Positions 18,020-47,855 of a stretch of 64,000 bases of DNA are shown here, one piece after another; the stretch's first letter is position 1; each line of letters starts with the position of its first letter. The stretch is from Macrostomum lignano (lineage: Eukaryota), in assembly GCA_002269645.1 (NCBI GenBank), contig NIVC01000056.1, positions 930,001 to 994,000 of the forward strand. The letters run 5' to 3'. Under the pieces are notes generated by a model. The model saw nothing but the letters and a program-made list of their open reading frames with translations, was not told the DNA's origin and did no database searches. The position numbers and the translations under genes are program-made.

Positions 18020-18098
18020 CTGAAAGATGTTGTAAAAAACTTGGTTTATTTCTGCAAATAGCACAATATATCTGCTTTTAGAACAAAACAAAGGATCT

Positions 18099-26565: not shown

Positions 26566-26840
26566 TATACATGCGCAACTGTTGGCTGACCTAGCCAATC
26601 TGGCCACCGTAAATTGTGGTGGACCAGGGGTAAGTCGCAAAAATGCCACCCCAAAGAATATGGACCTAGTACTAATTAGATGCTGAGGCATTTAGGCTTG
26701 ATAAGACAGTCATAGTTACTCCTGCCATTTTCCCAAAACTGCATCAATTTTGCTTTAGGGTTTTTTCACAGGTAAGTTGCATTTTTGGTCAAAAAGTAAG
26801 TCACATGGCCAGTATAAATCAGGCGGGTTGCACATGTATG
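26566..26840 (-). mobile_element. Older copy of the CATACATGCGCAAC hAT-MITE family
   Basis: Ends (T)ATACATGCGCAAC and GTTGCACATGTATG. Interior is alignable by eye to the reverse complement of 27847-28144. TSD not preserved. Confidence 0.7.
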
Positions 26841-27846
26841 AGTAGATAGAGTAATAGTAAGGCAGTAAAAGTAGCAATATATGGAGTAGTAGATAAAGCA
26901 ATAGATATAGCAATATATAAATCAGTAGATAAGAGCTAGAGGCTAGAGCATTTTCTAATACCATTTCCTATCCCTTTTGGCCATAGATATCATTTTCTAT
27001 TATGGCACTACAGTCTCAAGATATGTTGTTTTATTGCAGCATTGATTCAAACTTGAAAATAATATCAAGAAACAAGTGAAAAGTTGCTATAAGCATATAA
27101 TATCATAGTCACAAATAGTCATATAATCACAAATTTTGATTTTTTTGAGATCTTGAAACTAAGATTGAGATTTTAAAAAGTGTCAAGATCTTGACAACTA
27201 AGATCAAGATTGAGATCTTGTCCAGGCCATTCTATATAAGATGGACATATTTGGAAAATAGAAAAAAGTCAATATTTTTGCTTGTCATTGCCTTATCAGC
27301 CAATTTTTTTTTCACCAAATCTTTTTTGTATGCAATGTATAGAATCTAAGAATAAAAAATGATAAAATGTTGGATTAGTATGTTATCAATTGGCAAAAAG
27401 TTATTTTTGTTAAAAATTGGACATTTTCTAAGCAAAAGACATCATTGAGTTTATGCACCTTTTAAAAACAAATAGAAGGCTGTAGAAGGTTAAAACAAAC
27501 TATATATAAAATTATAGTACTTGCATCATCAGATAAAAACATTAGCTCAACCATATAATCTATTATATTTTTAATATACTAGTACTTCAAAGTTACTGAA
27601 TTGATAGAAAAATATATTATGACCATAAGGCTGCCTTTTCTTTTGTATCTTTGTTGCATTTTGAGTTTATATATTCTAATAAAAGAGTATGACTTCTAAA
27701 GATGTTCTTACTCTAATTTTTAAAAAGTTATTGCAAAATTTCAAAAATGAAAAATGTTATAAGACTTTTACCTTTTAGTTTCTATATGTCAAAAATCCTG
27801 TTGTTACAACCATAAGTGCCATTCAAGGTTTAATAGCATCTATACT

Positions 27847-28144
27847 CATACATGCGCAACCCCCAAATTTCGGTCGGCCGTGCGACTTAGTTTTAACAAA
27901 AATGTGACGTACTTTTTGGCCAAAAATGCGACTTACATATAAAAAAACCCAAAAGCAAAATCAACACAACTTTGGGTAAACGGCAGAAGTAGCTATAAGT
28001 GTCTTATTAAGCCGAAATGTCTCGTCAGCTACTTAGTACTACTACTTGGGTGTTTTTTCGGGTGGGAATTTTTGCGACTTCCTTGGTTGGCCGCCAAATC
28101 GGTCGGCCAGATCGGCCGACTCGGCCGACTGTTGCGCATGTATG
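27847..28144 (+). mobile_element. hAT-type MITE, 298 bp
   Basis: Perfect 14-bp TIRs CATACATGCGCAAC and GTTGCGCATGTATG, with an exact 8-bp TSD TCTATACT on both sides. Confidence 0.92.
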
Positions 28145-29389
28145 TCTATACTAATGATTATATCTATATGAAACTTTATAAACATATTCTTGACAAAATA
28201 ATCTTTCATTCAAAATATTGGTTTAGTGTATTCTATTATTAGATTTCATTTTATAAGTAAAAATAGTCTGTCATGTTATGACCATAATTATATGGAATGG
28301 CCTTCCAGCCCTTACTGGGTAGCTATCTTTCCAAGGGGTTTATTAAGGTCTCAGCATTGCCTGATTGCAGCGCATGGGCATTTTGGCGGACGGCGTCCGG
28401 CGTGGATTGGCCTGGCGGCAGCGTGGCACGTGGCAGCGGCGCGGCGCGCGGTGGCGTGGCATGTGGCAGCGGCGCGCGGCGGCGTGGCAGGTGCTTCGGC
28501 AACTGGCGGCAACAAAGGGCCAGTTCAACGTCGATTGATGCGAGCCATTGACTGACTAATTGAACCAAATCACTGATCCTAAGGACTGGCCCTGGCGCGG
28601 TACGGGTAGATGTCTGGCGCGGGAAAGGGGGGCGTCCGGCGTGGTTCAGACCTTGGCTACAATAGGGCAGCATTGTACAATAGTTATAGAAAGTTTATTA
28701 GCTACTAATATAGATATAGATAGATTATAAGAAAAAATAGAGATATGGCAGAATGGCTATAGATATAAATATGGGTAATTTGGCTAAAATGGAGCTTTAT
28801 TCAATGATCTAGATAAAAGTTACAAAGGCTATTACTTATTTTCATTCTTTGTCTTCATCTTTAACATTACATAGCTTTTACACTAAACTACTTATACTAC
28901 TTATACTACTACACTACTTATACACTAAACTTGTACTTGACCATTTTTGGTATATCAACAACATATCTATCAATGTGAATAGAAATATGTTAAAATTTTT
29001 AATCTGATGAAAACCCTTTTTGGACCATGGGATATTATTAGTATATACTAGCAATCTTCGCCCCCCGATGGGGGACATCTGGATAGAATCTCTGTTCTCT
29101 ACACGGATCAAAAACACATCCAAATAAAGCCTTCACAAAGACAATATACAAACTGCTCAAATGAAGAGCAATGCGAAAAGAAAACATCCCAAGACAGCAT
29201 GCAAGCATCCCCCCCCAGATAGCAAGCACCCCCAGATAGCAAGCATCCAATTGATAGCAAGTATCTATCCTTAAATAGCAAGCATCCACCAGACAATAAG
29301 TATCTAGTGCAACAATTTTCTTAGCTTTATGGTGGCTTCTTTATGATTGGCATGACGCTTCTTTTTACGTTTGTAATTGTCTCTTTTAT

Positions 29390-32300
29390 GTTTGACATGG
29401 TGGCTCTTTTATGTTTGGCATGGTGGCTCTTTTATGTTTGACATGGTGGCTCTTTAATGTTTGACATGGTGGCTCTTTTATGTTTTGCATGGTGGGTCTT
29501 TAATGTTCGACATGATGGCTCTTTAATGTTTGACATGGAGTCACAAATATGTTTGACCTGGTGGCACTTTACTGTCTGCAATGATGGCTCTTTAATGTTT
29601 GACATGGAGTCACGTATACGCTTGACATGGTGACTCGTTAATGTTTGACATGGTGGCTCTTTAATGTTTTACATGGTGGCTCTTTTATGTTCGACATGGT
29701 GGCTCTTTAACGTTCGATATGGTGGCTCTTTAATGTTCGACATGGAGTCACATATATGTTAGACATGGTGGCTCTTTAATGTTGGACATGGTGGCTCTTT
29801 AATGTTTTACATGGTGGCTCTTTTATGTTCGACATGGTGGCTCTTAAATGTTTGACATGGAGTCACATATATGTTGGACATGGTGGCTCTTTAATGTTTG
29901 ACATGGTGGTTCTTTAATGTTCGACATGGTGGCTCTTTAATGTTCGACGTGGTGGCTCTTTAATGTTCGACAAAGTGGCTCCTTTATGTTTGACATGGTG
30001 GCTCTTTAATGTTTGACATGGTGGCTCTTTAATGTTTGACATTGTAGCTCTTAAATGTTCGACATGGTGGTTCTTTTACGTTTGACATGGTGGCTCTTTA
30101 ATTTTCGACATGTTGGCTCTTTTATGTTTGACATGGTAGCTCTTTAATTTTCGACAAAGTGGCTCTTTAATGTTTGACATGGTGGCTCGTTTATGTTTGA
30201 CATGGTAGCTCTTTAATGTTCGATGTGGTGGCTGTTTAATGTTCAACAGAGTGGCTCTTTAATGTTTGACATGGTGGCTCTTTAATGTTTGACATGGTAG
30301 CTCTTTAATTTTCGACATGTCGGCTCTTTTATGTTTGACATGGTGGCTCTTTAATGTTTGACATGGTAGCTCTTTAATTTTCGACATGTCGGCTCTTTTA
30401 TGTTTGACATGGTAGCTCTTTAATGTTCGACACAGTGGTTCTTTATTGTTTGACATGGTGGCTTTTTCACGTTCGACGTGGTGGCTCTTTAAAGTTTGAC
30501 ATGGTGGCTCTTTAATGTTTTACATGGTAGCTCTTTAATGTTCGACATGGTGGCTCTTTTAAGTATGACAAAGTGGCTCTTTAATTTTTGACATGGTGGC
30601 TCTTTAATGTTTGACATGGTGGCTCTTTAATGTTCGACATGTCGGTTCTTTTACGTTTGACATGGTGGCTCTTTAATGTTCGACATGGTGGTTCTTTTAC
30701 GTTTGACATGGTGGCTCCTTAATGTTTTACATGGTGGCTCTTTTATGTTCGACATGGTGGCTCTTTAACGTTCGACATGGTGGCTCTTTAATGTTTGACA
30801 TGGAGTCACATATATGTTGGACATGGTGGCTCTTTAATGTTTGACATGGTGGTTCTTTAATGTTCGACATGGTGGCTCTTTAATGTTCGACGTGGTGGCT
30901 CTTTTATCTTCGACAAAGTGGCTCCTTTATGTTTGACATGGTGGCTCTTTAATGTTTGACATGGTGGCTCTTTAATGTTTGACATTGTAGCTCTTAAATG
31001 TTCGACATGGTAGTTCTTTTACGTTTGACATGGTGGCTCTTTAATGTTTGACATTGTAGCTCTTAAATGTTCGACATGGTGGTTCTTTTACGTTTGACAT
31101 GGTGGCTCTTTAACGTTCGATATGGTGGCTCTTTAATGTTCGACATGGAGTCACATATATGTTAGACATGGTGGCTCTTTAATGTTGGACATGGTGGCTT
31201 TTTAATGTTCGACATGGTGACACTTTAATGTCTGAAATGATGGCTCTTTAATGTTTGACATGGAGTCACGTATACGCTTGACATGGTGACTTGTTAATGT
31301 TTGACATGGTGGCTCTTTAACGTTCGACATGGTGGCTCTTTAATGTTAGACATGGTGGCTCTTTAATGTTTTACATGGTGGCTCTTTTATGTTCGACATG
31401 GTGGCTCTTTAATGTTAGACATGGTGGCTCTTTAATGTTTGACATGGAGTCACATATATGTTGGACATGGTGGCTCTTTAATGTTGGACATGGTGGCTCT
31501 TTAATGTTAGACATGGTGGCTCTTCAAATTATTTTCATGGTGGCTCTTAAATGTTTGACATGGAGTCACGTATACGCTTGACATGGTGACTCGTTAATGT
31601 TTGACATGGTGGCTCTTTAATGTTTTACATGGTGGCTCTTTTATGTTCAATATGGTGGCTCTTTAACGTTCGACATGGTGGCTCTTTATTATTTGACATG
31701 GTGGCTCTTTAATGTTTGACATGGTGGTTCTTTAATGTTCGACATGGTGGCTCTTTAATGTTCGACGTGGTGGCTCTTTAATGTTCGACAGAGTGGCTCT
31801 TTAATGTTTGACATGGTGGCTCTTTAATGTTTGACATGGTAGCTCTTTAATTTTCGACATGTCGGCTCTTTTATGTTTGACATGGTGGCTCTTTAATGTT
31901 TGACATGGTAGCTCTTTAATTTTCGACATGTTGGCTCTTTTATGTTTGACATGGTAGCTCTTTAATGTTTGACAAAGTGGTTCTTTATTGTTAGACATGG
32001 TGGCTCTTTTATGTTTGACATGGTGGCTCTTTTATGTTTGACATGGTGGCTTTTTCACGTTCGACGTGGTGGCTTTTTAAAGTTTGACATGGTGGCTTTT
32101 TTATGTTTGACATGGTAGCTCTTTAATGTTCGACATGGTGGCTCTTTTAAGTATGACAAAGTGGCTCTTTAATGTTTGACATGGTGGCTCTTTAATGTTC
32201 GACATGTCGGTTCTTTTACATTTGACATGGTGGCTCTTTAATGTTCGACATGGTGGTTCTTTTACGTTTGACATGGTAGCTCCTTAATGTTCGACATGTC

Positions 32301-32550
32301 GGTTCTTTTACGTTTGACATGGTGGCTCTTTAATGTTCAACATGGTGGCTCTTTTATGTTTGACATGGTAGGTCTTTTATATTCGACATGGTGGCTCTTT
32401 AATGTTTGACATGGAGTCACGTATATATGTTTTACATGGAGTCACAAATATGTTTGACATGGTGGCTTTTTAATGCTTGACATGGTGGCTCGTTTATGTT
32501 TGGCATGGTGGCTCTTTAATGTTCCACATGGTTCTACTGATATGTTTGAC
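29390..32550. repeat. 23-bp minisatellite (TTTGACATGGTGGCTCTTTAATG), ~135 copies, with interspersed GGAGTCAC variants
   Basis: Direct tandem repetition. Confidence 0.97.
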
Positions 32551-32595
32551 ATTGTGCTTCTTTTATGTTTAGCAGTTTCATGTTTTCAAGGTGTT

Positions 32596-32685
32596 TTAAT
32601 AAAAAAATTATTTTGCACTACTAAGATTCGAACCCAGGTCGCTACATTAGCATTCCAGTCTGTTCGCATCTGGGCTATCTCTTTT
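32596..32685 (-). pseudogene. Degenerate tRNA-like Pol III unit or SINE head
   Basis: Minus strand: TAGCCCAGATG (A-box-like), GGTTCGAATC (B box, T-arm can fold), then a T7 run. The acceptor stem does not pair. Confidence 0.45.
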
Positions 32686-34429
32686 CAATTGGAGAACATG
32701 AATTGTGGCCCTTATAATTCAATTCTTACAGCAAGTCAATTAGAGTAAAAAGTTATGACATAATCAATTTCTCAGTCAGCCAGTATCAGTTTCAATTCAA
32801 GTTAGCAATATTGGTTACGCAATTTAAATCAAGTCGTGTGTGCATTTCTTCGGCACTGTTTTCTACTTGTTGTGATGCAATCTTTATCAGAATTGAAATT
32901 CAGTCAGTCAGGTTTTTTTCTAGCATTCTTACAATGCATTTCAAGTCGAAAATTTTGCTTGACCTTTGCAAAAAAGCATGTTTTTCGAATATTTAATCCA
33001 TTTAATATATAGCAATTTCTTAGCCAAGATGCATGTACCGTCCCAGGAAAATTTCTGATCGAATGGTGCAAGTTTGAAGAAAATCGGTTGAGCCATTTTT
33101 TCTGAAATCTATCGCATACCCACAGACAACTCATTTTTAGTATATAGGATTATTATATTCTATTGATACATAAGCAAAAGCATCTAGGTTTATTTTTATA
33201 TAATAAAGATATTATGGTAGGGGCCTAGGCCTATCCTAACTTTCAAAATTTCAATCTTAAATTAGACTTTAACTAGGCCATAGATATGATTTTGTATCTT
33301 AGCAACTAAAATCATATCACAATAGAAACTTAGACTTGTTTTTAATTTAATAGGCCTAATAAAGTAACCCTTTGTTAAAAATAAAGGGCAATAAAAAGAG
33401 CAAGACAAAATTAAACTTTAAAAAGAGAAAATGATAAATAAAGAAGAGCAATGCCAAAAGAAAAAGAAATAAAAATAAAATAAATAAATAAATAAGTGTT
33501 AAACTATTATTAAATAGAGGCCTAATTCTATATTTTCTAAGGAATTTTTTCCTGTGCAAACTGCTAAAAATAGGCCTATTAGGCCTAGCCTAGGCCTAAC
33601 TCCAATTTTTGGCATAGGCCAAAGATAGGGCCTTGGGTATAGGCCTACAAAGAGTAAAATATCTACCAAGTCCAAAGTTTCTAGAGTAAATAACACAAAT
33701 AATAGAATCAATCATATAATACATAACAGACTATTACTTAATTACTTAATAGTTGTATATGCCTAGGCCTAGGCCTAGCCTAATTCTTGCCTCTTGACAA
33801 GAACAACCCAAGCAACCCTCAACCCTAGTTTTGATTAGGCCCTAGAGATTAATAGGTGATGTGATGCCGGCCGATGGTGCGATGCTACATAATTCTAAGG
33901 GTCACCTGCCACCTCACCTGGTTAGGCCTGCCGCCTATTTTATCATCCTAAAATCCTACAAAATTTGTTTCGCTTCTGCTTTTATGACCGTCCATAAGTA
34001 ACCCAATGACACCTCCAATTTACCTGTAATACTGTACTAGCCTATATATGATTAATGACTAATGTGCAGCTATAAAACTTCTTTTTTAAGCCACTTGACT
34101 TTTTAAGAAAGACAAACTTTAACAAATATTATCAAAAGCTTTTAGCATTTACTATAAAAGTAATTTAATTATTACTGTTAGAGTTACTATGTCTCTTTAA
34201 AAAATTACAAAATCGTCTATTTTTATGAAAATTTATTAGATAAACTCGTGGTAGTGGGAATTTAATCTTCGCATTTTCATAGAAGTTGTATACCTTTGCA
34301 TGTCCTTAAGCTCCCCGGATCCTGAAGTCCTCCTCGTCAATCAATGTAACAGTTGAAAAAGGTAGACAAGTTAACCTGCGGTGAAACCTCTCCCGTTGTC
34401 TAGTTTTTTTCTCTTGAGCTTCATAAATG

Positions 34430-34718
34430 AGTAGAAGAATTTACTCTCAACTTTCAAATGGTAAAATACGAGCTAACTTTAAATAAGTCTCCAATAAGCC
34501 TTATTGTGTGCATTTGAATTAATAGCTTTGTAGAGTCTTACAGCTTGACTTGAACTAGTATTTGGTTTGTATTATTTACAATTGCAGTGAATATTTACCT
34601 ACAGTTTTTTCAGCGTGGTAATTGAACCATTTTCCATACCAAGTATGGAATGAGTTAAAGCAATTCCATTGTCTAGTGCTAATGAGCGGTGAGCCAAGGA
34701 ATGTATGTAGTTTATGCC
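34430..34718 (-). mobile_element. Possible decayed hAT transposase remnant
   Basis: Stop-interrupted frame containing INYIHSLAHRSLAL, resembling the hAT HCxAHxLNL motif. Single-motif evidence only. Confidence 0.25.
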
Positions 34719-35214
34719 TAATACTTTTGTTAAAATAAAAGTCTTTATTTAATCTTAGGTATTATATAAATGAGTATTTTTAAATGTCATTTTTTGTATT
34801 GTTTGCACTCTTTTTAAGTGAAATTAAATTTTTTGTGGGAGTGGAAATATAGGCCTAGTTACACTTTGTATATTATTCAAACATATTGCTGGTAAGTAAT
34901 GAAGACTTTTTATAATGCGCCAGCACATAAAATGTAATTTATTTGACATTTTTTTATATTTTTGCTTTAGTTTAGAATGAATGCAAAAAACTTTTTGGTA
35001 TGCTACAAAAGTACTCTGAGTGAAACAACTAGAAAAAATATTGATGATAGATCTTCAATTTTTCTTTAAATTTTATATCCTAAATATCTCATTTTTATAG
35101 AAGCGATCAATATCTTTGATACAAAATAATTATTCATAAGCAATAATACTATTGATACTTTTACACTCATTTCTGGCAACTAACAAAACCTTTGATCCTC
35201 CTTGCATCAGCCAG

Positions 35215-38200
35215 GATGCATTTTGGAATGTCATAGTAGTGACTAGTCAGTCTGAAAAGTCAGTAGATCAAGTGTGTCAAGCTCTGATCATCGAAAAGCA
35301 GGCCAATCGTTTAAGTATTGGCGAAATACTCACAGTAGTAGACCCGGCACCCTGCATTGGCAGTGGTGGTGCTACTCTGAATGCCCTCTATTGCGTTGCG
35401 GAGCATCTGTCAGCCGCTAGTGGCTTGTGCACCCTCAGCCCCGATGAGGCTCTGGCCAATCGGAGAATTCTTTTGCTGCATGTTGGTTCTGGTAGCCGGC
35501 CGTATCTGTTTGACCCACTAGGTCGGCATGTGGTTATGGTGCCAACAGGAGGTGAGGCGTTGAAAATTTTTCTTAGTTTCTCATGGCTTATGCTAGTTAT
35601 GGTGTGCCAAAATGAGTTATCACTGAATGTCAAAGTGGTTGCCATTCGATGTCAACATGAGAGTCACTGGATGCTATCATGACTGTCACTGGATGGCATC
35701 ATGAATGTCACTGGATGCCGTCATGACTGTTACTGGATGCCAGCATGATTGTTGATAGATAGAACAGATAGAATCAAATGATATAGTTTTAAAATACGAT
35801 CGTCCATTTCTCTACCAGATGGCGTCGATGAAGTGACGAAATCCGAAAACGTCTCGCTTGTCTCGGAGCGTTGGGCATCGTTAGCCGTTCACTGCGTTCG
35901 CCAGATGACCTGGTTTTGTTCCGCTAGTGCTGCCACCCCCGACAAAGACAATATCGATGCGTCAGCTGAGGCGGATGCAAGCCCGGCCGGTGTCTGGGTC
36001 TGCGGTACCGACTTTTATATGCGCCTGTCTCGGCCAGTCTCTTGGGGACAGCTTGTTAGCGATAGTTGTCCCGAGGTAGGTATTGCATGCTTTGAACTTA
36101 TATAGGTTTTTCTCTGTAAGCCTAGTGAGGGGGTTGTAGCCTAGTGAGGGGGTTGTAGCCTAGTGAGGGGGTTGTAGCCTAGTGAGGGGGTTGTAGCCTA
36201 GAGAGGAGGTTGTAGCCTAGTGAGGAGGTTGTAGCCTAGTGAGGGGGTTGTAGCCTAGTGGCGTCGGACTCACGAATGAAAGATCGGGGGTTCGCTTCCT
36301 AACCCACTTGAAACAAATGTGTGTCCTTGAGCAAAGCGCTTAACTCTGCATTGCTTCAGTTCGTAAAATGGGTGCCAGCATTAGCTGGGGTAATTGAGGG
36401 TTGTGTGTGTGTGTGGCAACCCCCAGTCATTGGACTGAACAGCGGTACGCAGCCTTCAGATGCGCCGCGCAATACTATTAGGGCAGGTGTAATCAAACTA
36501 TTATTATTATATTATTAGGCTTTTTTAATTAGACCCCCTTCCAGATCGTTGTTAGACAAATTAGTGAACAAATTGTCGAGAGTCGACAATGGTCGAGAGT
36601 CGGTAGCGGTCATGTCATGTCCTGAATTTCTCATTGTCGGAATACACGCCTCAAGTACAAACAAGTCCTACCCATGGCCACATAAATATGGCCTCTCGTT
36701 AAATGAACTCTAGTAGATTTAGAGCTAATAAGGGGTCGTAAAAATGAGACACAAGTTCTCTCAAAGATCATCTCTACTGTTATTCCACCTTAAGGTGCTA
36801 ACAGTAGCTGGCTTGTGCAGCGCAGATGAGGCCATGCAACACGGTGTACTGGCTCTAGACTCAGCCACCGGCTTTGTTACTCAAGTTGTCTACAGACCAA
36901 GTGCCGAGTCTCTAGTTGGCCTCGAAATCGGTTGCGTACCCGATGACTCATCCTCGAAGTTGTCGCCCAGATTTGCCCGCGTGTCCGGGCCGTATTATTT
37001 TCCACCATCGGTGGCCGCGGCGATGGTCGGCCTGCACACTACCGCTCCGCTGCATGGATGCATCTACGACGGGATTGACAGCGGAGCTCCGCCGATCTAC
37101 CTGTCACTCGTCTTTGACCTGCTGGCAGCATTCTGTTGTCCCGACTCGAAAGATCAGGCTAGTGACGAGCCTAATGAACTTTTAGCGTCGGCATCTACAA
37201 CTGAGCTTGCGATGCGTCAGAGCAGAGGACTTGGTGATTTAGCAACCTTAGCGGCATTGAATGCTGCGGAGTCTGCGGCTAGAATTGATGAAGCTAATCG
37301 ACAGTTAAAGGATCGGCTAGGAGGCTTTAAAAACCGACTGGTCCTGCTGTCTGGGGCAGAGTTTTGCTATCTGGCCAATGAGCCCGAGGCTTATTTCCGA
37401 TTGCTGTTGGACTTTCAGTCGCAAACTTTGTCTACTTGGAGGTTTCACTGCAGCTACAATGTTGATTGCAGCGTGGAATCTGCATCAGCTATGGTGGCAG
37501 TTTCCGGCTTGTCAGAAGCATCCGCGGCTACTGAGAGACAGCAGGTGCTGTTGAAAAACTTGATTCAACCGCCTGTTGATTGTTATTTAAGTTGCTTACG
37601 AGTTCGACTACGAGATGATGAAGATGGTGCATCAGGTGTGTGTTTTTAGGTTACTCCCACTGACATTTTTTTAGCTTGAGCACATACAATGGCACCAATA
37701 CTGTACGCATGCACGCACTCACAAAATGCTCACCCGGTGTACAGCGGTCCTGGCTTTCTACTCGTCAGACATGTACACTCTCTGTTTTGGGGGCTTGGCC
37801 CCAAGCTTCCATGAGGTGTACGCATCCGTTTGCGTGAGATATTTCATCATGGGTGACTACGAGCTATAATCAGCACCCATTCACATCCAGCATAGGTCAC
37901 TGCAACTTGGCTTCAAAAGGTTCCGTTTTATCCTTCATCGCTTTTTCTCATTCTTCTAACAGCAAGCGACGGCAGTCGAGTTTTCTTTGGAGTTGCTAGA
38001 GCGGACCAACCGATGAGCCCTTTGATTGATAAGACTCAACAAGCAGAGTCGGAACATCGTTGCTCAATACTTGGCCAATCAGTGAACAATTTCTGCTTAA
38101 GAACTGGTCTAAAATTGGCTGAGTTATTTCACGATAACGACTCAAAGCTGCCGCAGTGTCTTTGGCACTGTCGACTTTTCCCTGTCACTGGGGCCAGCGA

Positions 38201-41200
38201 TGAAGAAAAAGTGAGTTAAACTGTCATCTAGTTTTTTGTTTATATTGATGTTTACTTTAACAATCTCAACTTAGTGGCCCTAAACCGACTCAAGCCACTC
38301 GTAAAATGCTCTTTAACAAATTGAACAGATATACTGTATAGGAAAGTGTCAACTTTTACGTAATAAAATTTCTCAGCCGTATATTTCTATGCTGATTGTC
38401 TTTTCTGAAAAGTACTACTGAAAGCAGACGAAAAAGAAATTTCTAGAAATTTAAGCAAAATTCAAAGAAATTTCGAATTCAATCTGTCATAGGTTCGCAG
38501 GGTTAGGAACCATTGAATCATAGGGCGGACAACCATTGTATCATGGTGTCATAGAGATGAGGATTATTGCGTTATGGTGTCATGGAGCTGAGGACTTTTG
38601 CGTCATAGTATCACAGAGCTGACAACCATTGCGTCATAGTATCACAGAGCTGATAACCAACACAGAGCTTTGCGTCATAGTATCACAGAGCTGACAACCA
38701 TTGCGTCATAGTATCACAGAGCTGACAACCATTGCGTCATAGTGTCACAGAGCTGACAACCATTGCGTCATAGTATCACAGAGCTGACAACCATTGCGTC
38801 ATAGTGTCACATAAGGTCTTTATGTACAACCTTCGTCTACTTTACAGATGGCTTAAGAAAGCGATAATGGAAGAAAGCCTCCAGGCCTCAAGGGGAGGAG
38901 AGAGGCTCACCACGTGACTCAAGTCCGCTTATTAAAAGGCCAGAAAATTAGAAGGTTCGATTTAAGTTCAAAGCATCTCCTTGTAACTGTGCGTGCTCCA
39001 TCGGATTGCTGCTTTCTTGTTTATTGCATTCGAACAAAGGCAGAGCTGGGCTCATTCCAGAGCATTAAATAAAAATTTTCTTTTAAATCCCTATACCTCA
39101 CACCATCTCACTTGACTTAGCTGCAGGGGGCTCCGGGCACCCAGATACAGCATGGAGGCGTTCCGCCCATTTCGCTAACCCCTGGCGACCACGGGCAGCT
39201 GGTGCTGCGGTGTCGCGCAGGGAGATCCGTTGGTGCCGGTGTATGCAGCGCGATCCCCCTCCGGAGAGTCCAGAAAGTGGATGGTCGCTCGCCCGGTAGC
39301 CCTTAGGGTAGCGGACGAGCTGGCAGAGATTCTCGGGCCTGAAAACGTCGGAGAGGTCCGGGTTTGGGCCGAGGTAGGTAAGCCTGTCCTGAGTAAAGGC
39401 GGGGCATTCACAGATGAAGTGCTCCGCATTCTCGACACCGGAGAGGCAGAAAAGGCATTCCTCACTGCGGATTTTTCCCTGGAGGTGACAATCTCTGGCA
39501 AAACAACCATGACCCGAGAGGGCCATGGTAACCGCCCTGATCTCCCTGCGGTTGAGGGGATCCACCTAAGGGACACCTTGTTGGAGGCGCCCTACGCGAT
39601 TAAGCTGCCCGATGCAGTTGAGGACTGTACGCGAGAAGGTTGTGTTGCGATCAAGGGCGTGGAAGGTGAAATTCCCCCAAACTTGTTGATTGTACAGCTC
39701 GATGGCGCAGGAGCTGGTGGAGAGAACTTCGTTCTGGAAGACGGTAGAGCAGGTTCCGGTGTGCTGGGAGAAGGTCGCCACGGTTCTCCCTCCAGACACT
39801 ATTCAGTAGCTGTAGCCAGAGATGAGGTTAATTCGGGACCCGTCAGTGAATCAGTGAATTTCACGGGGTTTCCAGTTATCCCTTTTTAGTGAGGGGTGGA
39901 ATGCTGGTTTTGAATTTTAGCGGAGGGCAGAGCGTGGACGGGATTCCTTTCGAGAGGGTCAGCACAGACAGCGGCGGTCGATCGTTGCCTCTCCACCGAC
40001 AGATCAAAAGGGAAGATCCAGTGAATGCTAGCAAAAAGCGTAGAGGGAGCCGCGCTCATGATAGCTCGACAAGCTCGACCTTGCATCTTTTAAGAAGTTC
40101 AATGACTTTATATGCTTCTTTCCTAGGTTAATTGACAGTTTGATCAATATTGTGTTAAAAAAGTCTGTCAGCAGTTTCATAGCTTTGAAGATAGGAGCAT
40201 TTTGTCAGTTTGAAATTTTCAACAGAAACAGTTGTTTATCCAAAGAATCCAATTAATTTGGAGAAACAAGCTATGCTATTTGTATTTTCATGCAGTCAGG
40301 ATGGAAATTTAGAGATTGCTGTAATGCTGTGACTCTTGGGCAAGAATTGCTGAGTTGTCAAGTCTGCTGTGGCTCATGAGGGGGCGCTGATTGCTAGTCT
40401 AGAATCTAAAATTTAACACAAAGGCCCCCTTTGTCTTCTACAAACGCAAGTAAAATTTTGAAACGCTGAAATCACAATGGGCTTTACTGACGGAATTACG
40501 ACTTGTATTTAACGATGAATAAACCATTCTATTGCGCGAACAAAAGCGAAGTGCTAACCGGAGGTACAACAGCGACACAGCTCGCGAGCAAAATTCGTCA
40601 GCTTAATTGTATTCATTTTGAAAACCTTTTAAACTGATTGCTTTTTACTGGAAAAATTCTCGAAAAGCATCATAAACGTGCAAATCGCGCTTGATTAAAT
40701 AATCCTTATAACTTTTATGGTGTTTGAAAAGTCACAACAAATATGGTATGATCGACTAAGCAACGCAGTGAAGCGTCGTTTTTTTCGATCTAAAATAGAA
40801 GCATGATGACGCAATAAATCGTGTTATCTAAAAATAGAAACAGAGTAAACACAATAGCTAAATGATGTGACCTAAAAAAAGACACAAGATGAACACGGTA
40901 AAGCGTGTGATGTAACAATAAAACCAGAACACGAGAGTAGCGCGCAGAGGGTACAGGTATTATAATCTGCTGTTCAAATTATTATCAATTCGGTCAAATC
41001 ATATGTTCAAAAGTGACCTTACATGTTTCGCTAGGTTTTTTACTGTGATTAGTCAATAGAAATAAGTTTAATGGGTAGCTAAGGACGAAATCAGGGAAAC
41101 TAAACTAGCGCTTAAACAACAAATATGGATATCTGCGAAGTATGTTGCCAAAAAAGGACTGTCTAAGAGGAATAACAAGACGCATGGATAATTTCAATCT

Positions 41201-44200
41201 CTCAAACGTCATCAGTCATCAGTTCTGCCAATTCACTTAACTCCTTTGCTGTGTATCCATAGTTAGCCACTTTTAGAATCGGCCTTAATTGTTCCATTGC
41301 TGAACGATTTCAAACAGTGTCTAAACGCGGCACTTCGTTTGTACAAGACAAAGAAGTTGACGCACTGATTCACCAAAGCCAGGGTGAGGCTGGTGTAAGC
41401 TAGGTTCGTTATCAGAACCAAATAGTCCAAGTTTTCGGCTATGTCCAGCAAGTAAATTGAAATCTCCATCACTGGTCTCATTATCATGAGCGGCAACGTC
41501 AGTAGAAAGTAGATGATAGACAAAATTAGAACGAGCATAGTTCCGTTTAACTTCTGGGCACTGCCGTTCCCTGTGCTATTGTTGCTAGTATTCGAATAGA
41601 GAAGCTTCCGCTTCTTCACAGCCGAGGTCACCTCGTAGAGCAGGAAAACGTTCAGCCCCAGCATCAGCACGATAAAGATCAATGGCGGATTGGACATTAC
41701 CGTTGTGTAAGCAAGCATCAACAGTTGAGTCTGCTTCGAGTGATAGCAGTAGATTAAAACGATTCCGCCTGGCATGTGAACTGTCTCGTGACCAACTAGA
41801 ATGCCGTTCGGCAGGGCGATCATCGCCGCCAATACGAACGATGCAATGAGAGCCCTGACCGCCCACTTTATGCCAACTTTCCTCATCATCAGCGGCCGTC
41901 GAACAACCAACACCCGGTCAGTCACCAGCACTAGCAGCCACATGCAGGACAGAGCGTGGCAGAAGTTCATAGCGTAGCGAGATATTTTGCACGCGACGTC
42001 GTTCAGATTGTAACTGAAGAAGCCAAATTTGCCTCTGGTGATCCAAGACAGGCCTTTAGTTAGGAATCCGTTGAAAATTCCGATCACTACTAGGCTAATA
42101 GTGTCCGCAATGGCGATGCAACCCAAGTAGAGATTCTGCCGACTAAGCGGTCTCAGGCGGCGTAGCATGGCGTGGGCAACGAGGCTGTTGCCGATGGCTC
42201 CAATAACAATGATGATTGGCAGCAAGATGGCTGAAATTGACCCGATCACGTGGGACAGAATGCAGTACAGATGCCTCGACGGGTCTCCACTTTCACAATC
42301 TCGCACAATCTGCATCGCGCTCTCTACGAAACCGAATCTTATCAGTTTTTTCGATTCATTTTTCGTATGGAGATTATCGGCTTGCATATTGCTGCTTTAA
42401 TGAAGTATTTCTAAACGGAGTCATCGATAGCAGCAGCTTGTGAACTCTCTTCTTGGAGATGTTTAAATCAATCCAGCGATCCGGCAATATTCAGGCATGA
42501 TCCAATCAAATCTTGCCAAATTTTTAAAGGCATATCCTATTGGCCAAATTCATCGAATTGGAGTACTTCTTGTGAGCCAGACAGATTTCTTGTCAACAAA
42601 AAAACTGACAAAATATTTGCACAGATTTTTTTCTTGAAGTCTTGTTTTGGTACCCATGGTCACTTGTATTTGTGCTTTGGTCAAAATTTTAAGGAGCATA
42701 AATTCTTTGATCAAGAGCTGAATCAACTAGCCTGGCTGATTTTAGGTGGACGTAACTAAAATAGAGTGTCTTTATTGGGAAGTTGTTAGAGCCTAAGTTT
42801 GACAAGTAGGAGAAGCCATGCACTTTTTAAGTCTTTTTAGTCAAGAATCAACTGCTCTCAAATGTCAACGATTAAAAAAAATAGTTTTTTAGCTACGAAT
42901 CCTAATTTAAAACAGCGCGTGGAGACTGCGAGTTCAATATGGCTTTGAAGAAGATTAAATATATAATGTTTCATGGTTTTTAATCTAAATGATGAATAAA
43001 CAACACGGGACTGCCTGGTAAAATATTATATTTGTTTTACTGAGTGACCTCAGATCTAATTAAAACTATATGTTAAAATATTCGGCATGTAAAGAGCAAT
43101 GCATTGTTTTTACTATGATTTTAAACTTTTTCCATCAATATCTCAATATTAGTAACTTACTTCTTGTCTATATATTACAAAGGATGAATTATCATTGTTC
43201 GTAAAATTATAACCCTATTTATACCAATAAAAACCGACTCAATTAGAAATTCACTACGATTAATAATAAATAACCTATAGATACAACTTTACGAAATACC
43301 GAACTCGAGAAGTAGTTTTGGAATTGTAGAATGCATAAGCCAGTACTATAAAATAACTCTTGACTCCTATATAATGATTAATCTACTAGATGACTTGTGC
43401 CACTAACGCTAGTACAAGTAGTGTAGTGCCTACAAGCATATAACAACGCTATAAAACACTTGTACGTATAAGTACAGTCAAACCGTACATCTACGTCAAA
43501 TCAAATTGAGGTCTAAAGTCAGCCAAGCAAAAACGGACTTAAAGCACAGAACCCGATCAGGCGGGAATTAAGGTTAAAAGCCAGAAAAGTTAATCAAGAA
43601 AGTTTCTATGGCACAGCGTTCAGGTGAACTGAACTGAACCTGATGGACGGAAGCTGATGAATTTTGATGGCATTAACGTTGCTTGATGTCTTTTCAAGCC
43701 CAAAGCAAATTTTGCTTTGGGTAAAGCTCAAAGCAAAAATTTTATATACGTAAAATTCCAACAAAACTGAAGGCCTCAAAGGGGGTCGCTTCAACATTGT
43801 CGAAACTTCACATTGACGTAACTTTAAATTTTCCAAAGTTCACATTTTTTAAATTTCACATCAACTAAACTTACTTCAAATTTCGAGCACAGAATTTCAA
43901 AACGTCAAAACTTCGATGTAAAATTTCGACAATGTAAAGCGAAGTGTAATGTCAATAAAACTACTTTGCAATAAAACTTTAGCTTGAAATTCTCGCCTGG
44001 CTGTTCAACTGCCCTGATGGCGACGGCGCGTCTCAACCGGATTTAGCCGCTCTGTGGCGCCGTTGCCGCCGACTGTCAATGGCCGACATTGTTGCCAATG
44101 TTGACATCGACTCGGAGCTGACGCATCGTCGATCAGTAGCCCAATCGGCTCTTGTCAGAGCTTTGTCAGCCACGCTGCGACACTCTAGCGGCACTCGCAG

Positions 44201-47200
44201 CAGTGGTGGGGTGTCAGGCCTCAGGTCTTTGTTCGGCTTAGCTGTCGCCCATGGTTTCGACAGCCCACTGCTGCCCGCTCTCGACTCGCTGGCTCTGCGG
44301 CTGGCAGCCGAGGGAGGCGGCGACAGCATCGCCAGGGCGAGGTCGGCTCGAGTGCTGGCCGCCATCGGGCTGCTGCTGGGTGAGTCTGTGATTTGATGCC
44401 TGTCACTCTGCCGTAATCTCAGCCCTACATGTAGCTATCTGTGCCTGTCACTCCTCCATCTCACTCCCAGTACCCGCCTGTCACTCCTCCGTCTCACTCC
44501 CAGTACCCGCCTGTCACTTCTCCATCTCACTCCCAGTACCTGCCTGTCACTCCTCCATCTCACTCCCAGTACCCGCCTGTCACTCCTCCATCGCACTCCC
44601 AGTACCCGCCTGTCACTCCTCCATCTCACTCCCAGTACCCGCCTGTCACACCACCCTCAGGCACCCAAGCCGGCAGTCGCGGCGGCCTCCGCAGCGGCCC
44701 GGCCGATAACCGACGCTGGTCGGGCGCCCTGTCGGACATCTCGGCCGGACAGCTCTCGGCCGGTCTGTCTGGCATGGCCAACCTTCGAGCCGAGTGGGCC
44801 GGCCGGCCGGATCTGCTAATGCGAGCGGCGCGGCACTACGAGAGAGCCGCACAGCTGCTGGTGTCCGGCGCCGTGCGAGCGTCCTGCCTTGACGACCAGC
44901 TTGGTGAGTGAGTGGGCTTTGTTTTTTTGCTCCTGACAAGGTTCTCGCTAGCTCAAGTGAACGAATCATTAATAATAACCCATATCCTAATCCTCATTAA
45001 TAATCAGTATCTTAATCCTCATTGATAATCCATATCTTTATCCTCATTGATAATCCATATCTTAATCCTCATTGATAATTCATGTCTTAATCCTTGTTGA
45101 TAATCCATATCTTTATCCTCATTAATAACCCATATCATAATCCTCATTAATAATCAGTATCTTAATCCTCATTGATAATCCAAATCTTAATCCTCATTGA
45201 TAATCCATATCCTAATCCTCATTGATAATCCATATCTTTATCCTCAGTTATAATCTGAGGATCATATCTTAATCCTCAATTATAGTCCATATCTTAATCC
45301 TCATCGATAATCCAAATCTTAATCCTCATTCATGATTCATATCCTAATCCTCATTGATAATCCGTATCTTAATCCTCATTGATAATCCATATCTTTATCC
45401 TCATTAATAATCAATATCTTAATCCTCATTGATAATCCATATCTTTATCCTCATTAATAATCCATATCTTAGTCCTCATAGATAATCCAAATCTTAATCC
45501 TCATTGATAATCCATATCCTAATCCTCATTGATAATCCATATCTTAATCCTCATTGATAATCCATATCTTAATCCTCATTGATAATCCATATCTTAGTCC
45601 TCATAGATAATCCAAATGTTAATCCTCATTGATAATCCTTATCTTAATCCTCTTTGATAATCTGGTTGACACCTGAATCTCCGGCATGGCACTGCCTCGC
45701 AGATGCAGCCAGAAGCGTGTCGCGGCCAATCCGCCCAGCGGTGCCCATCGGCCATGGCGTCACAGCGCTGTGTCCGGCTCGCATTGATCTGTCCGGCGGT
45801 TGGTCGGACACGCCGCCAATCTGCTGGGAATTCGGCGGCTGCGTCGCCAATATGGCCGTCCTAGTTGACGGCCGGAAACCCATCGGCTGCCGGGTTGAAG
45901 CCTTTGATCTTGCCGCCCCTGATGACACTGTGAGCGGTATGGACCATCGGCCTGGTCGATCACTGATTGAACTGGTGAACGCTGACGCCAACTCCAGCGG
46001 TGCTGTCGTTGGACTGAACAGTCTGGAATACTTAGCTGACTGTTCCAGGCCGCTGGTGCCGGGAGCTTTAGCTAAATGCTGCCTAATCGTGTCCGGTTTG
46101 TTTAGCATTGACAACTCTGCCGCCGGCGGCAGTTTAGCCGAACAGGTGTCGCGCGTGTGCGGCTCGGAACGGCGGGGCATTCGGGTGACAGCTTGGTCTG
46201 GTCTGCCGGCTGGCTCCGGTCTGGGCACCAGCAGCATCTTAGCTGCGGCTGTTCTCGCAGCTCTGCACAGATGGACTGGGCTAGACATCGATTTGGACAG
46301 GCTAGTGCGGGGAGTGCTGGCTGTTGAGCAGCTGTTGAGCACCGGAGGCGGATGGCAGGATCAAGTTGGCGGCCTGTATCCAGGAATTAAGGTGGCAAGG
46401 TCGCCTAAAGGACTGCCGTTGAGGGTGCAGGTGAGTTTTTGGTGTATTTTAGGCAGTTTTGTAGGGAGAAATAGAGGCTTTGAGCACAGATCGGAGCGAC
46501 AGTCGAATTTTTCAAGCAGTTGTGTCTCCCTTAGGTGAGGCTCAGATCCCATTTAGGTACTTGGGCGAGGCTCAGAATCCTCAGGTCCCTTTCAGATACT
46601 TAGGTGAGGCTCAGATCCCATTTAGGTACTTAGGCGAGGCTCAGATCCCATTTAGGTACTTGGGCGAGGCTCAGAATCCTCAGGTCCCTTTCAGATACTT
46701 AGGCGAGGCTCAGATCCCCATTCAGATACTTAGGTGAGGCTCAGATCCCCATTCAGATACTTAGGTGAGGCTCAGATCCCCATTCAGATACTTAGGTGAG
46801 GCTCAGATCCCCATTCAGATACTTAGGTGAGGCTCAGATCCCCATTCAGATACTTAGGTGAGGCTCAGATCCCCATTCAGATACTTAGGTGAGGCTCAGA
46901 TCCCCATTCAGATACTTAGGTGAGGCTCAGATCCCCATTCAGATACTTAGGTGAGGCTCAGATCCCCATTCAGATACTTAGGTGAGGCTCAGATCCCCAT
47001 TCAGATACTTAGGTGAGGCTCAGATCCCCATTCAGATACTTAGGTGAGGCTCAGATCCCCATTCAGATACTTAGGTGAGGCTCAGATCCCCATTCAGATA
47101 CTTAGGTGAGGCTCAGATCCCCATTCAGATACTTAGGTGAGGCTCAGATCCCCATTCAGATACTTAGGTGAGGCTCAGATCCCCATTCAGATACTTAGGT

Positions 47201-47855
47201 GAGGCTCAGATCCCTATTCAGATACTTAGGTGAGGCTCAGATCCCCATTCAGATACTTAGGCTTTGTTTTTCTTCTTTGTTTGGGATACACGGGCCTCGC
47301 GGTTATTTCTTATCCCAGGTAACCCCATTGGAACCGCCTGCCGGATTCCTGGACCGGCTCGACTCCAGCTTAATACTGCTGTACTCTGGCAGCACCAGAC
47401 TGGCTCGCAACCTGCTGCAAGAAGCTGTCCGCTCTTGGCACTGCCGCGACGCATCAGTTGTGAGCATCATCGCCGGCCTAGTTGACGACGCTGAATCCGT
47501 TGCTAAGGCTGTAGAGCTGGGCGATTTATCGCTAATCTGCCAGTGCATCCGAAGGTACCGCGGTCGGAAGTTGGCGATGGCGCCTGGCAGCGAATCGGCG
47601 CAGTTGACCTCGCTTTTGGACCGATTGGAGAACTTTGATGCAACCGAAAGCGATGGATCATCAGCTGACGTCAGAGTGTCTTCGGCTGCGATTCTCTGCG
47701 GTGCAGGCGGCGGCGGCTTCTTGGCGGCTTTGCTGCCGCCGGCGACCAGGAATCGACTGTTGGCCGAGGCGGCCTCGGACGGCATCCTGCCGGGCAGCGG
47801 CGGCGCGCGGCTGCACACCGTCCGGGTGGCTCGGGACGGGCTGGAGTTCGTTTGA
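35215..47855 (+). CDS. FCSK: L-fucose kinase (fucokinase), 8 exons, ~1195 aa; no in-frame genomic ATG seen
   Basis: Exons 35215-35551, 35819-36075, 36795-37635, 37963-38210, 43983-44379, 44661-44903, 45703-46430 and 47319-47855 (3588 nt, frame-consistent, GT-AG). Motifs: GSGGATLNAL, GIDSGA, GGLRSGPA, RAARHYE, PARIDLSGGWSDTPP, GHMP GSGLGTSS, GGGWQDQVGG, TRLARNLL, GAGGGGF. Confidence 0.93.
36118..36517 (+). mobile_element. tRNA-derived CORE-like SINE with its 5' 19-bp head tandemly repeated ~7 times, in FCSK intron 2
   Basis: (GAGGGGGTTGTAGCCTAGT)n runs into A box TAGCCTAGTGG, then B box GGTTCGCTTCC (36289-36299), a MIR-CORE-like TGTGTCCTTGAGCAA..CTTAAC..GTAAAATGGG, and an (ATT)n tail at 36499-36517. 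Confidence 0.8.
37700..37805 (-). mobile_element. Diverged internal fragment of the 3444/48158 SINE family
   Basis: GTGTACAGCGG..CATGTACAC..TTGGGGG.TTGGCCC is shared with the other copies. Confidence 0.5.
38590..38810. repeat. 31-bp minisatellite (GCGTCATAGTATCACAGAGCTGACAACCATT)
   Basis: Direct tandem repetition in FCSK intron 4. Confidence 0.9.
39098..39880 (-). mobile_element. 5'-truncated non-LTR retrotransposon fragment (RNase H plus C-terminal CCHC; I/LOA-like), degenerate
   Basis: Across shifted frames: FTDGSR, STVFQNE, VSLRWIP (RNase H), then LSGHGCF..CLFC...E.AEHFICECP. Contains stops and frameshifts. Confidence 0.82.
41263..42387 (-). CDS. Intronless rhodopsin-family (peptide receptor-like) GPCR nested antisense in FCSK intron 4, 374 aa
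   Basis: Seven hydrophobic segments. TM1 GAIGNSLV, TM2 IAIADT, Cys at the start of TM3, DRV (DRY variant), TM4 Trp/Pro, TM6 FLLTLP, TM7 NQCVNF. Confidence 0.9.
   Translation of the reverse strand: MQADNLHTKNESKKLIRFGFVESAMQIVRDCESGDPSRHLYCILSHVIGSISAILLPIIIVIGAIGNSLVAHAMLRRLRPLSRQNLYLGCIAIADTISLVVIGIFNGFLTKGLSWITRGKFGFFSYNLNDVACKISRYAMNFCHALSCMWLLVLVTDRVLVVRRPLMMRKVGIKWAVRALIASFVLAAMIALPNGILVGHETVHMPGGIVLIYCYHSKQTQLLMLAYTTVMSNPPLIFIVLMLGLNVFLLYEVTSAVKKRKLLYSNTSNNSTGNGSAQKLNGTMLVLILSIIYFLLTLPLMIMRPVMEISIYLLDIAENLDYLVLITNLAYTSLTLALVNQCVNFFVLYKRSAAFRHCLKSFSNGTIKADSKSG
44440..44650. repeat. 33-bp minisatellite in FCSK intron 5
   Basis: CCTGTCACTCCTCCATCTCACTCCCAGTACCCG, ~6 copies. Confidence 0.92.
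44975..45660. repeat. 25-bp minisatellite (TAATCCATATCTTAATCCTCATTGA) filling FCSK intron 6
   Basis: Direct tandem repetition. Confidence 0.95.
46533..47260. repeat. 31-bp minisatellite (TTAGGTGAGGCTCAGATCCCCATTCAGATAC) in FCSK intron 7
   Basis: About 23 units, the distal ones near-identical. Confidence 0.96.

What the first reader, a model, noticed from the sequence alone, without database searches (positions are those of the whole stretch)
35175..35230. Fucokinase also lacks an in-frame ATG; tandem acceptor where only the second AG fits an SL-AUG start
Seen: branch-point-like ACTAAC at 35179-35184, a pyrimidine tract, then CAG (35208-35210) and CCAG (35211-35214). AUG joined after 35214 gives MDAFWNVIVVTSQ, aligning with the fucokinase N-terminus (..DWTVIILTCQ). 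AUG joined after 35210 gives only an 11-codon peptide. No in-frame ATG lies upstream in the open frame, and the preceding 2 kb is AT-rich. Inference: this is a second SL-dependent start in the same window, and acceptor choice could act as an on/off switch.
Basis: partly seen in the sequence, partly recalled or inferred. Interest (0 to 1): 0.7.

Follow-up and report, generated by a model that had tools for sequence, protein, structure and literature searches.

The report
Flatworm fucokinase gene without start codon

Summary
The sequence observation is correct: ACTAAC at 35179-84, CAG at 35208-10, CCAG at 35211-14, and no in-frame ATG between the TAA at 35137 and the conserved fucokinase N-terminus. 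The window is Macrostomum lignano contig NIVC01000056.1 (100% identical). The published 35-nt spliced leader (SL) of this species ends in ATG, and SL-donated start codons have been documented in flatworms since 2006. Homologous fucokinases start 2-12 residues before the conserved Trp, so a start codon is needed right here and the genome offers none. All three public gene copies are annotated as 5'-partial. An SL-AUG start is therefore the best explanation, but it is a known kind.

The chosen acceptor is doubtful. The annotated coding sequences begin 27-36 nt upstream of 35215. Neighbouring 5'-partial genes show that such annotated starts lie inside first exons. The homeolog, and by their Gln codon two ParaSite-derived models, carry a motif-perfect SL acceptor TTTCAG|GCA at the equivalent of 35170-75. 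It is in frame and would give M-ATNKTFDPPCISQ-DAFW. In this copy that AG reads TG. The two remaining AGs are 4 nt apart, and the first one met is out of frame. No reads were available, and nothing supports a regulated on/off switch.

The parts
35137..35139 (+). In-frame TAA that closes the fucokinase reading frame upstream
   Evidence: conserved in L001, L002 and L003
35140..35214 (+). 25 open codons (AIILLILLHSFLATNKTFDPPCISQ) without any ATG. This stretch is outron, 5' exon or leader, depending on which acceptor is used.
35170..35175 (+). TTTCTG. The homeolog L003 reads TTTCAG here, which is a perfect [T/C]TNCAG SL-type acceptor, in frame with an SL AUG. In this copy the AG is lost (T at 35174), leaving an in-frame CTG near-cognate codon at 35173-75.
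   Evidence: motif from PMC8629364; Gln at this codon in P0001 and P0029
35179..35184 (+). ACTAAC, a branch-point-like hexamer 27 and 31 nt before the two AGs. It is also codons Thr-Asn of the open frame, and 35179 is the first base of the NCBI 5'-partial CDS (PAA92352.1).
35185..35207 (+). Pyrimidine-rich tract (AAAACCTTTGATCCTCCTTGCAT), comparable to the cis acceptors of the same gene
35208..35210 (+). CAG, the first AG. An SL AUG joined here is out of frame and gives the 12-residue peptide MPGCILECHSSD.
35211..35214 (+). CCAG, the second AG, 4 nt downstream. An SL AUG joined here is in frame and gives MDAFWNVIVVTSQ...
35215..35551 (+). Conserved coding part of exon 1 (DAFWNVIVVTSQ ... GSGGATLNAL ... 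VPTG), ending at the donor GAG|GTGAGG
35216..35236 (+). Out-of-frame mini-ORF ATG CAT TTT GGA ATG TCA TAG (MHFGMS*). It contains the first genomic ATG downstream of the acceptors.
35536..35538 (+). First in-frame genomic ATG (codon 108). A start here would remove the conserved N-terminal region, including GSGGATLNAL.
35819..47855 (+). Rest of the fucokinase gene. Exons: 35819-36075, 36795-37635, 37963-38210, (39127-39209 and 39698-39758, present in some models only), 43983-44379, 44661-44903, 45703-46430, 47319-47855 including the stop. All exons are open and all junctions are GT-AG.
   Evidence: PF07959; PF07959 and PF00288 precomputed for the annotated proteins

Best explanation
This is the 5' end of the Macrostomum lignano L-fucose kinase gene (Mlig005799.g2). 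The gene family has no genomic start codon, and the initiator AUG is most likely the last three bases of the 35-nt spliced leader (...TTGCATG) added by trans-splicing.

In intact copies the acceptor is probably TTTCAG|GCAACTAAC, at the window equivalent of 35170-75 with the exon starting at 35176. That gives M-ATNKTFDPPCISQ-DAFWNV... In the window's copy, and in its 99.5% twin, that AG is TG. This copy would then yield a productive SL-AUG mRNA only when the second AG is chosen, and is otherwise impaired.

Shown here: organism and contig identity, absence of an ATG in all copies, the frame of each AG, the expected N-terminal position from homologs, the annotated 5' ends, and the CAG/CTG difference.
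Inferred: that trans-splicing occurs at this gene at all, which acceptor is used, and that the SL AUG is the one translated.
For: - Identity: the window is 100% identical to NIVC01000056.1 of GCA_002269645.1, and the proteins are named as M. lignano fucokinase.
- The SL is CGGTCTCTTACTGCGAAGACTCAATTTATTGCATG. About 21-39% of genes are trans-spliced, and the acceptor motif is [T/C]TNCAG (PMC8629364; PMC5730564).
- The flatworm SL AUG is an established initiator (Cheng et al. 2006, as cited in PMC12582326, and PMC9851317).
- There is no in-frame ATG between the upstream stop and DAFW in L001, L002 or L003. All NCBI models are 'partial' and the ParaSite-derived models start without Met.
- In 14 of 18 full-length fucokinases the conserved Trp sits at residue 3-13, for example MKWTAIVLTCQ. 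The start must therefore be here and no extra N-terminal domain is expected.
- No GTRAG-donor ATG exon lies in the 2 kb shared with the homeolog.
- The annotated CDS starts at 35179 (two copies) and at the equivalent of 35188 (L003). These are 3 and 12 nt after the TTTCAG site and 36 and 27 nt before 35215.
- Controls on the same contig: the UPF0489 gene has CTTTCAG|GTC, no ATG, and an annotated start 6 nt inside the exon. The Grx, Aminotran_5 and Tim29 annotations start 3-24 nt after their ATG.
- TTTCAG is present in L003 and in frame.
Against: - No SL-junction read, cDNA or 5' RACE data could be consulted, so trans-splicing at this gene is undemonstrated.
- The annotated 5' ends do not follow an AG. 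They could equally reflect an unspliced transcript from a nearby start site, or pre-mRNA.
- Reads multi-map among 95-99.5% identical copies, so annotation of this copy may be borrowed from its sisters.
- The ParaSite models P0001 and P0029 start 9 nt upstream of the TTTCAG site, which is unexplained.
- The 13-residue extension ATNKTFDPPCISQ has no counterpart in other fucokinases.
- The control set is small (4 genes).
- T at 35174 could be an allelic or assembly variant.
Confidence: 0.5

Rival explanations
1. In all copies the SL is joined at CCAG|GAT (35215), giving MDAFWNV... The neighbouring CAG (35210) gives a dead 12-residue ORF, so acceptor choice tunes or switches expression.
For: - CAGCCAG|GATGCA is identical in all three copies.
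- ACTAAC plus a pyrimidine tract sit at a proper distance.
- The product would have Trp at residue 5, in the middle of the 3-13 range seen in homologs.
- It is the only in-frame AG in this copy.
Against: - Annotated exon sequence extends 27-36 nt upstream in all copies, whereas control genes' annotated starts lie inside their exons.
- AGCCAG matches neither variable position of [T/C]TNCAG.
- The first AG after the branch point and pyrimidine tract is the out-of-frame one, and on general knowledge of 3' splice-site scanning it should be used at least as often.
- Sequence identity here says little, because the flanks are about 95% identical anyway.
- There is no evidence of regulation.
Confidence: 0.2
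2. A cis-spliced upstream 5' exon supplies the ATG and is joined to one of these acceptors. Flatworm acceptors can serve both cis- and trans-splicing.
For: - Parasitic flatworms share acceptors extensively between cis- and trans-splicing (PMC12582326).
- ParaSite model P0002 joins far-upstream exons (19.3 kb and the 20-23 kb repeat) to ...Q|ATNKTF.
- A weak candidate exists at 34682-34702 (MSGEPRN, AAT|GTATGT), conserved in L003.
Against: - No candidate with a GTRAG donor lies in 33133-35170, and only 2 lie in 23400-35170 against about 12 expected by chance.
- The best relaxed candidates score below most real donors of the gene.
- None of the three RNA-seq-guided NCBI models has an upstream exon.
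- The upstream part of P0002 is antisense to a glutaredoxin gene plus a minisatellite, which is typical of a predictor hunting for an ATG.
- The region further upstream is structurally different in the homeolog.
Confidence: 0.1
3. The mRNA of this copy is not trans-spliced. Transcription starts shortly upstream and translation begins at a non-AUG codon. The candidate is the in-frame CUG at 35173-75, created by the same CAG-to-CTG change, which would give the same ATNKTF... N-terminus.
For: - CTG at 35173 is in frame with G at +4.
- Annotated 5' ends cluster at 35167-35188 equivalents.
Against: - The annotated start 35179 lies downstream of the CTG.
- The CTG is absent from L003 (CAG), so it cannot be the family's mechanism.
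- Its -3 position is T.
- The first AUG of such an mRNA opens an out-of-frame mini-ORF.
- Non-AUG starts are generally inefficient (general knowledge).
Confidence: 0.05
4. The 5' end of this particular copy is simply defective, or T35174 is an assembly or allelic variant. Function is then carried by sister copies, and the CAG/CCAG pair has no role.
For: - M. lignano carries several near-identical, mosaic copies.
- P0029 is window-like in exon 1 yet has Gln (CAG) at this codon.
Against: - All other exons of this copy are open with intact GT-AG junctions.
- T is present in two independent contigs, L001 and L002.
Confidence: 0.15

Closest known systems
Flatworm mRNAs that use the 3'-terminal AUG of the spliced leader as initiator Met (Schistosoma mansoni; Cheng, Cohen, Ndegwa and Davis 2006, J Biol Chem 281:733, as summarised in PMC9851317 and PMC12582326)
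   Same: The SL ends in AUG. The recipient ORF lacks its own AUG. The SL AUG is in frame with a conserved N-terminus.
   Different: The species differs: a free-living macrostomid. Trans-splicing of this gene is not demonstrated. The copy in the window has lost the motif-perfect acceptor seen in its homeolog.
SL trans-splicing in Macrostomum lignano (Wudarski et al. 2017, PMC5730564; Ustyantsev and Berezikov 2021, PMC8629364)
   Same: Same organism and assembly. The 35-nt SL ends in ATG. The homeolog's TTTCAG fits the published acceptor motif.
   Different: In the passages searched, those papers do not discuss SL-donated start codons. This gene was not found in the supplements held.
slORFs, reading frames created by SL addition (slORFfinder, PMC9851317)
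   Same: Concept of an ORF that exists only after SL addition. The 12-residue ORF from the first AG is of this type.
   Different: That study lacked flatworm ribosome-profiling data.
Tandem alternative acceptors (NAGNAG)
   Same: Two adjacent CAG acceptors that could compete.
   Different: The spacing is 4 nt, not 3, so the frame relative to the SL AUG shifts. Use of either site is untested.

Membership tests
SL-AUG-initiated flatworm mRNA | The organism has an SL whose exon ends in AUG | tested here: met
   The window is 100% identical to a M. lignano Mlig_3_7 contig. The published SL ends ...TTGCATG (PMC8629364).
SL-AUG-initiated flatworm mRNA | No genomic in-frame AUG upstream of the conserved N-terminus | tested here: met
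   There are 25 open codons without ATG after the TAA at 35137, and the same holds in L001-L003. The first in-frame ATG is codon 108.
SL-AUG-initiated flatworm mRNA | An AG acceptor that places the SL AUG in frame | tested here: met
   35213/14 is in frame and 35209/10 is not. L003 additionally has an in-frame TTTCAG.
SL-AUG-initiated flatworm mRNA | The mRNA actually carries the SL at that junction | not testable with these tools
   No read or cDNA data were available. The supplements searched do not list the gene. Annotated 5' ends do not coincide with 35211 or 35215.
SL-AUG-initiated flatworm mRNA | Translation starts at the SL AUG | not testable with these tools
   This needs N-terminal proteomics, ribosome profiling or a reporter.
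M. lignano SL acceptor motif [T/C]TNCAG | The hexamer ending at the acceptor AG fits the motif | tested here: not met
   CATCAG (35205-10) fails at -5. AGCCAG (35209-14) fails at -6 and -5. TTTCTG (35170-75) has no AG. L003's TTTCAG fits. The motif was found in only about 44% of published sites, so failing it is weak evidence.
L-fucose kinase (FCSK/FUK) | Fucose pyrophosphorylase-like domain PF07959 plus a GHMP kinase domain | tested here: met
   PF07959 hits on exons 3 and 4. PF07959 and PF00288 are precomputed for the annotated proteins.
L-fucose kinase (FCSK/FUK) | N-terminal W-x-[VI]-[IV]-[VL]-T and GSGGATLNAL block aligned with exon 1 | tested here: met
   BLASTP E=3e-18 against a sea-cucumber fucokinase. 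122 HMMER hits. Sequences.
NAGNAG tandem acceptor | Two AGs 3 nt apart, both used, frame preserved | tested here: not met
   The spacing is 4 nt (35210 against 35214), so the frame changes. Usage is untested.

The most novel reading that the evidence does not exclude
In this gene copy a single A-to-T change destroyed the native SL acceptor. Expression now depends on a choice between two AGs 4 nt apart, only one of which puts the SL AUG in frame, so that 3' splice-site choice in trans-splicing acts as a translational on/off control. Alternatively, the same mutation rescued the copy by creating a CUG start at the very codon where the SL AUG used to sit.
Probability: 0.06. Interest if true: 0.55.

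Novelty: new member of a known kind. Interest (0 to 1): 0.25.

Why it matters
The main value is for annotation. In M. lignano, and in flatworms generally, genes whose start codon comes from the spliced leader are deposited as '5'-partial' or are given spurious upstream exons; P0002 is such a case. Two of roughly ten genes in this window, fucokinase and the UPF0489 homolog, appear to be of this kind, so SL-aware ORF calling would repair many models. The CAG/CTG difference between near-identical copies is a small natural experiment on how the loss of an SL acceptor affects a start-codon-less gene. It does not reveal a new mechanism.

Tried and rejected
- A word-indexed protein search with exon 1 alone found nothing. 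This was an index artefact, because the full-length query then found identical proteins.
- Rfam found no family in the window. The SL sequence itself is absent from the window, so no SL RNA gene lies here.
- Pfam and PDB sequence searches do not cover exon 1. Homology had to be shown by BLASTP and phmmer instead.
- Conservation between homeologs (about 95%) is too high and too uniform to separate coding from non-coding sequence upstream of exon 1. In exon 1, 4 of the 5 differences are non-synonymous, though conservative.
- A search for a cis ATG exon found nothing convincing.
- Literature supplements (Grudniewska 2016 and 2018, Wudarski 2017, Calvelo 2025) do not list this gene or a fucokinase. 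Cheng et al. 2006 and Wasik et al. 2015 are not held.
- A start at the in-frame ATG at 35536 was rejected, because it would delete the conserved N-terminal block.
- No transcriptome-derived (Logan) M. lignano fucokinase proteins appeared in the clusters, so RNA evidence could not be reached indirectly.

Full report
**Observation**

Reading the window confirms every sequence statement of the finding.
- ACTAAC occupies 35179-35184. A pyrimidine-rich stretch follows, then CAG (35208-10) and CCAG (35211-14).
- The codon frame that continues as DAFWNVIVVTSQ... is open back to 35140, is closed by TAA at 35137-39, and contains no ATG.
- These two AGs are the only AGs in that open stretch.
- An ATG joined before 35215 gives MDAFWNV..., open to the exon-1 donor. 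Joined before 35211 it gives MPGCILECHSSD and a stop.
- The first genomic ATG (35216) is out of frame and opens a 6-codon ORF. The first in-frame ATG is codon 108 (35536).
- The 2 kb upstream has GC 0.30-0.33.

**What the locus is**

A 1200-residue concatenation of the open exons hit three Macrostomum lignano protein clusters at 88-95% identity, followed by animal and bacterial fucokinases.
- Locus L001, fetched for NCBI protein PAA92352.1 (BOX15_Mlig005799g2), is 100% identical to the window over 3.2 kb. The window is therefore contig NIVC01000056.1 of assembly Mlig_3_7.
- L002 is a 99.5% twin. L003 is a homeolog at about 95%.
- Spliced alignment gives a 10-exon gene (35215/earlier-35551 ... 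47319-47855). All junctions are GT-AG and the frame is intact.
- The domains are PF07959 plus a GHMP kinase domain.

**Is exon 1 really the N-terminus?**

- Pfam and PDB do not cover exon 1.
- BLASTP against a sea-cucumber L-fucose kinase aligns Trp5 with Trp10 at E=3e-18.
- An exhaustive phmmer search gave 122 hits.
- In 14 of 18 full-length hits the conserved Trp lies at residue 3-13. Examples are MKWTAIVLTCQ, MAADWTVVVLTCQ and MGHQRWTAIVLTC.
- The protein should therefore begin within a few residues of DAFW, and no extra N-terminal domain is expected.

**Where can the start codon come from?**

M. lignano has a single 35-nt spliced leader, CGGTCTCTTACTGCGAAGACTCAATTTATTGCATG, on 21-39% of genes. 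Its acceptor motif is [T/C]TNCAG (PMC8629364; PMC5730564).

All reported flatworm SLs end in AUG. [quoted passage not shown] 2006, as reported in PMC9851317, and PMC12582326).

Every public model of this gene lacks a proper start.
- The three NCBI proteins are 'partial' and begin TNKTFDPPCISQDAFW or TFDPPCISQDAFW.
- The ParaSite-derived UniProt models begin SFQATNK...
- One model (P0002) bolts on exons that are antisense to a glutaredoxin gene plus a minisatellite 12-16 kb upstream.

A scan for ATG-bearing upstream exons of the right phase found no GTRAG-donor candidate in the 2 kb shared with the homeolog. Only weak ones appeared elsewhere. An SL-donated AUG is therefore the most economical explanation, and it is a known one.

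**Which acceptor?**

- *Annotated 5' ends.* The NCBI CDSs start at 35179 (L001, L002) and at the equivalent of 35188 (L003). That is 36 and 27 nt upstream of 35215, and neither position follows an AG.
- *Controls.* To learn what such annotated starts mean, I looked at neighbours on the same contig.
  - The UPF0489 homolog on the minus strand also has no ATG. It has a CTTTCAG|GTC acceptor (exon start 18019), and its deposited protein starts 6 nt inside the exon.
  - The glutaredoxin, aminotransferase and Tim29 CDSs start 6, 24 and 3 nt after their genomic ATGs.
  - Annotated 5' ends here are therefore truncated and lie within first exons. The RNA-supported fucokinase exon must reach at least 35179.
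- *An upstream acceptor in other copies.* L003 reads tcaTTTCAG|GCAACTAAC at the equivalent of 35170-75. This is a perfect motif match, in frame, and identical to the glutaredoxin acceptor tcatttcag. SL-AUG there gives M-ATNKTFDPPCISQ-DAFW. P0001 and P0029 encode Gln at that codon, which implies CAG in those copies too.
- *The window's copy.* The window and L002 read TTTCTG (T at 35174). The likely native acceptor is therefore absent from this copy, and parsimony makes CTG the derived state.

Neither fits the motif (CATCAG, AGCCAG). The first one met downstream of either candidate branch region is the out-of-frame one. By the general first-AG rule of 3' splice-site choice (established knowledge, not tested here) it should be used at least as often as the second.

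**Caveats**

- I had no reads, so trans-splicing of this gene is inferred.
- Reads multi-map among the copies.
- The control set is four genes.
- P0001 and P0029 start 9 nt upstream of TTTCAG, which I cannot explain.
- The annotated ends could also come from an unspliced transcript. In that case the CUG created at 35173-75 would be the only plausible in-frame start in this copy. That is a low-probability but intriguing alternative.
- Nothing bears on regulation, so the 'on/off switch' remains speculation.

**Comparison with what is known, and novelty**

Mechanistically this is the Cheng et al. 2006 class of SL-AUG-initiated flatworm mRNA. The features testable here are met: the SL ends in AUG, there is no genomic AUG, and an in-frame acceptor exists. 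The decisive features are not testable with these tools: an SL junction in RNA and translation from the SL AUG.

It is not a NAGNAG site, because the spacing is 4 nt. It is a new member of a known kind.

Its practical value is for annotation of M. lignano, where such genes are deposited as partial or chimeric. The copy-specific loss of the acceptor is a minor curiosity that is cheap to test with existing RNA-seq.

**Verdict**

- Observation: confirmed.
- Interpretation: partly supported. The kind of mechanism is right. The acceptor is probably wrong, or relevant only as a cryptic site in this mutated copy. The switch is unsupported.
- Interest: 0.25.

Noticed in passing
window 16973-18025, minus strand: The UPF0489 (C5orf22-like, PF12640) gene also lacks an in-frame ATG. 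Its acceptor is CTTTCAG|GTCAAGCAA (exon start 18019), so an SL AUG would give M-VKQRQPIRVFIREPHDEV, which matches homolog N-termini such as MKTFVVEDHDEAL. The deposited protein starts QRQPIRVF.
   Followed up: partly
window 19642, 16300 and 7639 (minus strand); L004 8372, 11714 and 20375: NCBI CDSs of the glutaredoxin, aminotransferase-class-V and Tim29 genes are 5'-truncated, although a genomic ATG lies 6, 24 and 3 nt upstream. This looks like systematic 5' shortening of the Mlig_3_7 gene models.
   Followed up: partly
window 19259-19381 and 20118-23365, plus strand: UniProt/ParaSite model A0A1I8I8X3 (P0002) gives fucokinase an N-terminus made of sequence antisense to the glutaredoxin gene plus a 21-bp minisatellite translated as (PGEVVIL)n. 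It is almost certainly a prediction artefact forced by the missing ATG.
   Followed up: partly
window 29381-32570: A 23-bp minisatellite (CTCTTTAATGTTTGACATGGTGG, about 139 copies) is absent from the homeolog L003. Many other minisatellites fill the window, for example at 1-1400, 5.6-6.7 kb, 18.1-18.9 kb, 20.1-23.3 kb, 44.4-44.7 kb, 53-55.2 kb and 61.4-62.4 kb.
   Followed up: no
window 41266-42396, minus strand: A 377-codon open frame matching rhodopsin-family GPCRs (PF00001, E=1.4e-10) is nested antisense in the 4.2-kb fucokinase intron. It was not listed among the called genes of locus L001.
   Followed up: partly
window 39101-39886, both strands; exons 39127-39209 and 39698-39758: A GC-rich insert (GC about 0.56) has long open frames on both strands and no Pfam match. 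Two short pieces of it are used as extra exons in the ParaSite models (P0001, P0029) but not in the NCBI models. This may be a repeat-derived alternative exon or a mis-annotation.
   Followed up: no
window 35202-35207: TTGCAT, identical to the 3' end of the SL minus its final G, lies just before the first CAG. After trans-splicing at 35215 the mRNA would read UUGCAUGGAUGCAUUUUGG. This is probably coincidence.
   Followed up: no
L001, L002 and L003 compared with proteins P0029 and P0030: The fucokinase copies are mosaics. L002 shares exon 1 and CTG with the window but shares downstream residues with L003. P0029 mixes window-type and L003-type residues and has CAG. This suggests gene conversion, recombination between copies, or assembly chimeras.
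   Followed up: no
window 55168-55578, plus strand: An exon of the F-actin capping protein beta subunit gene (PF01115, E=3.8e-40).
   Followed up: no
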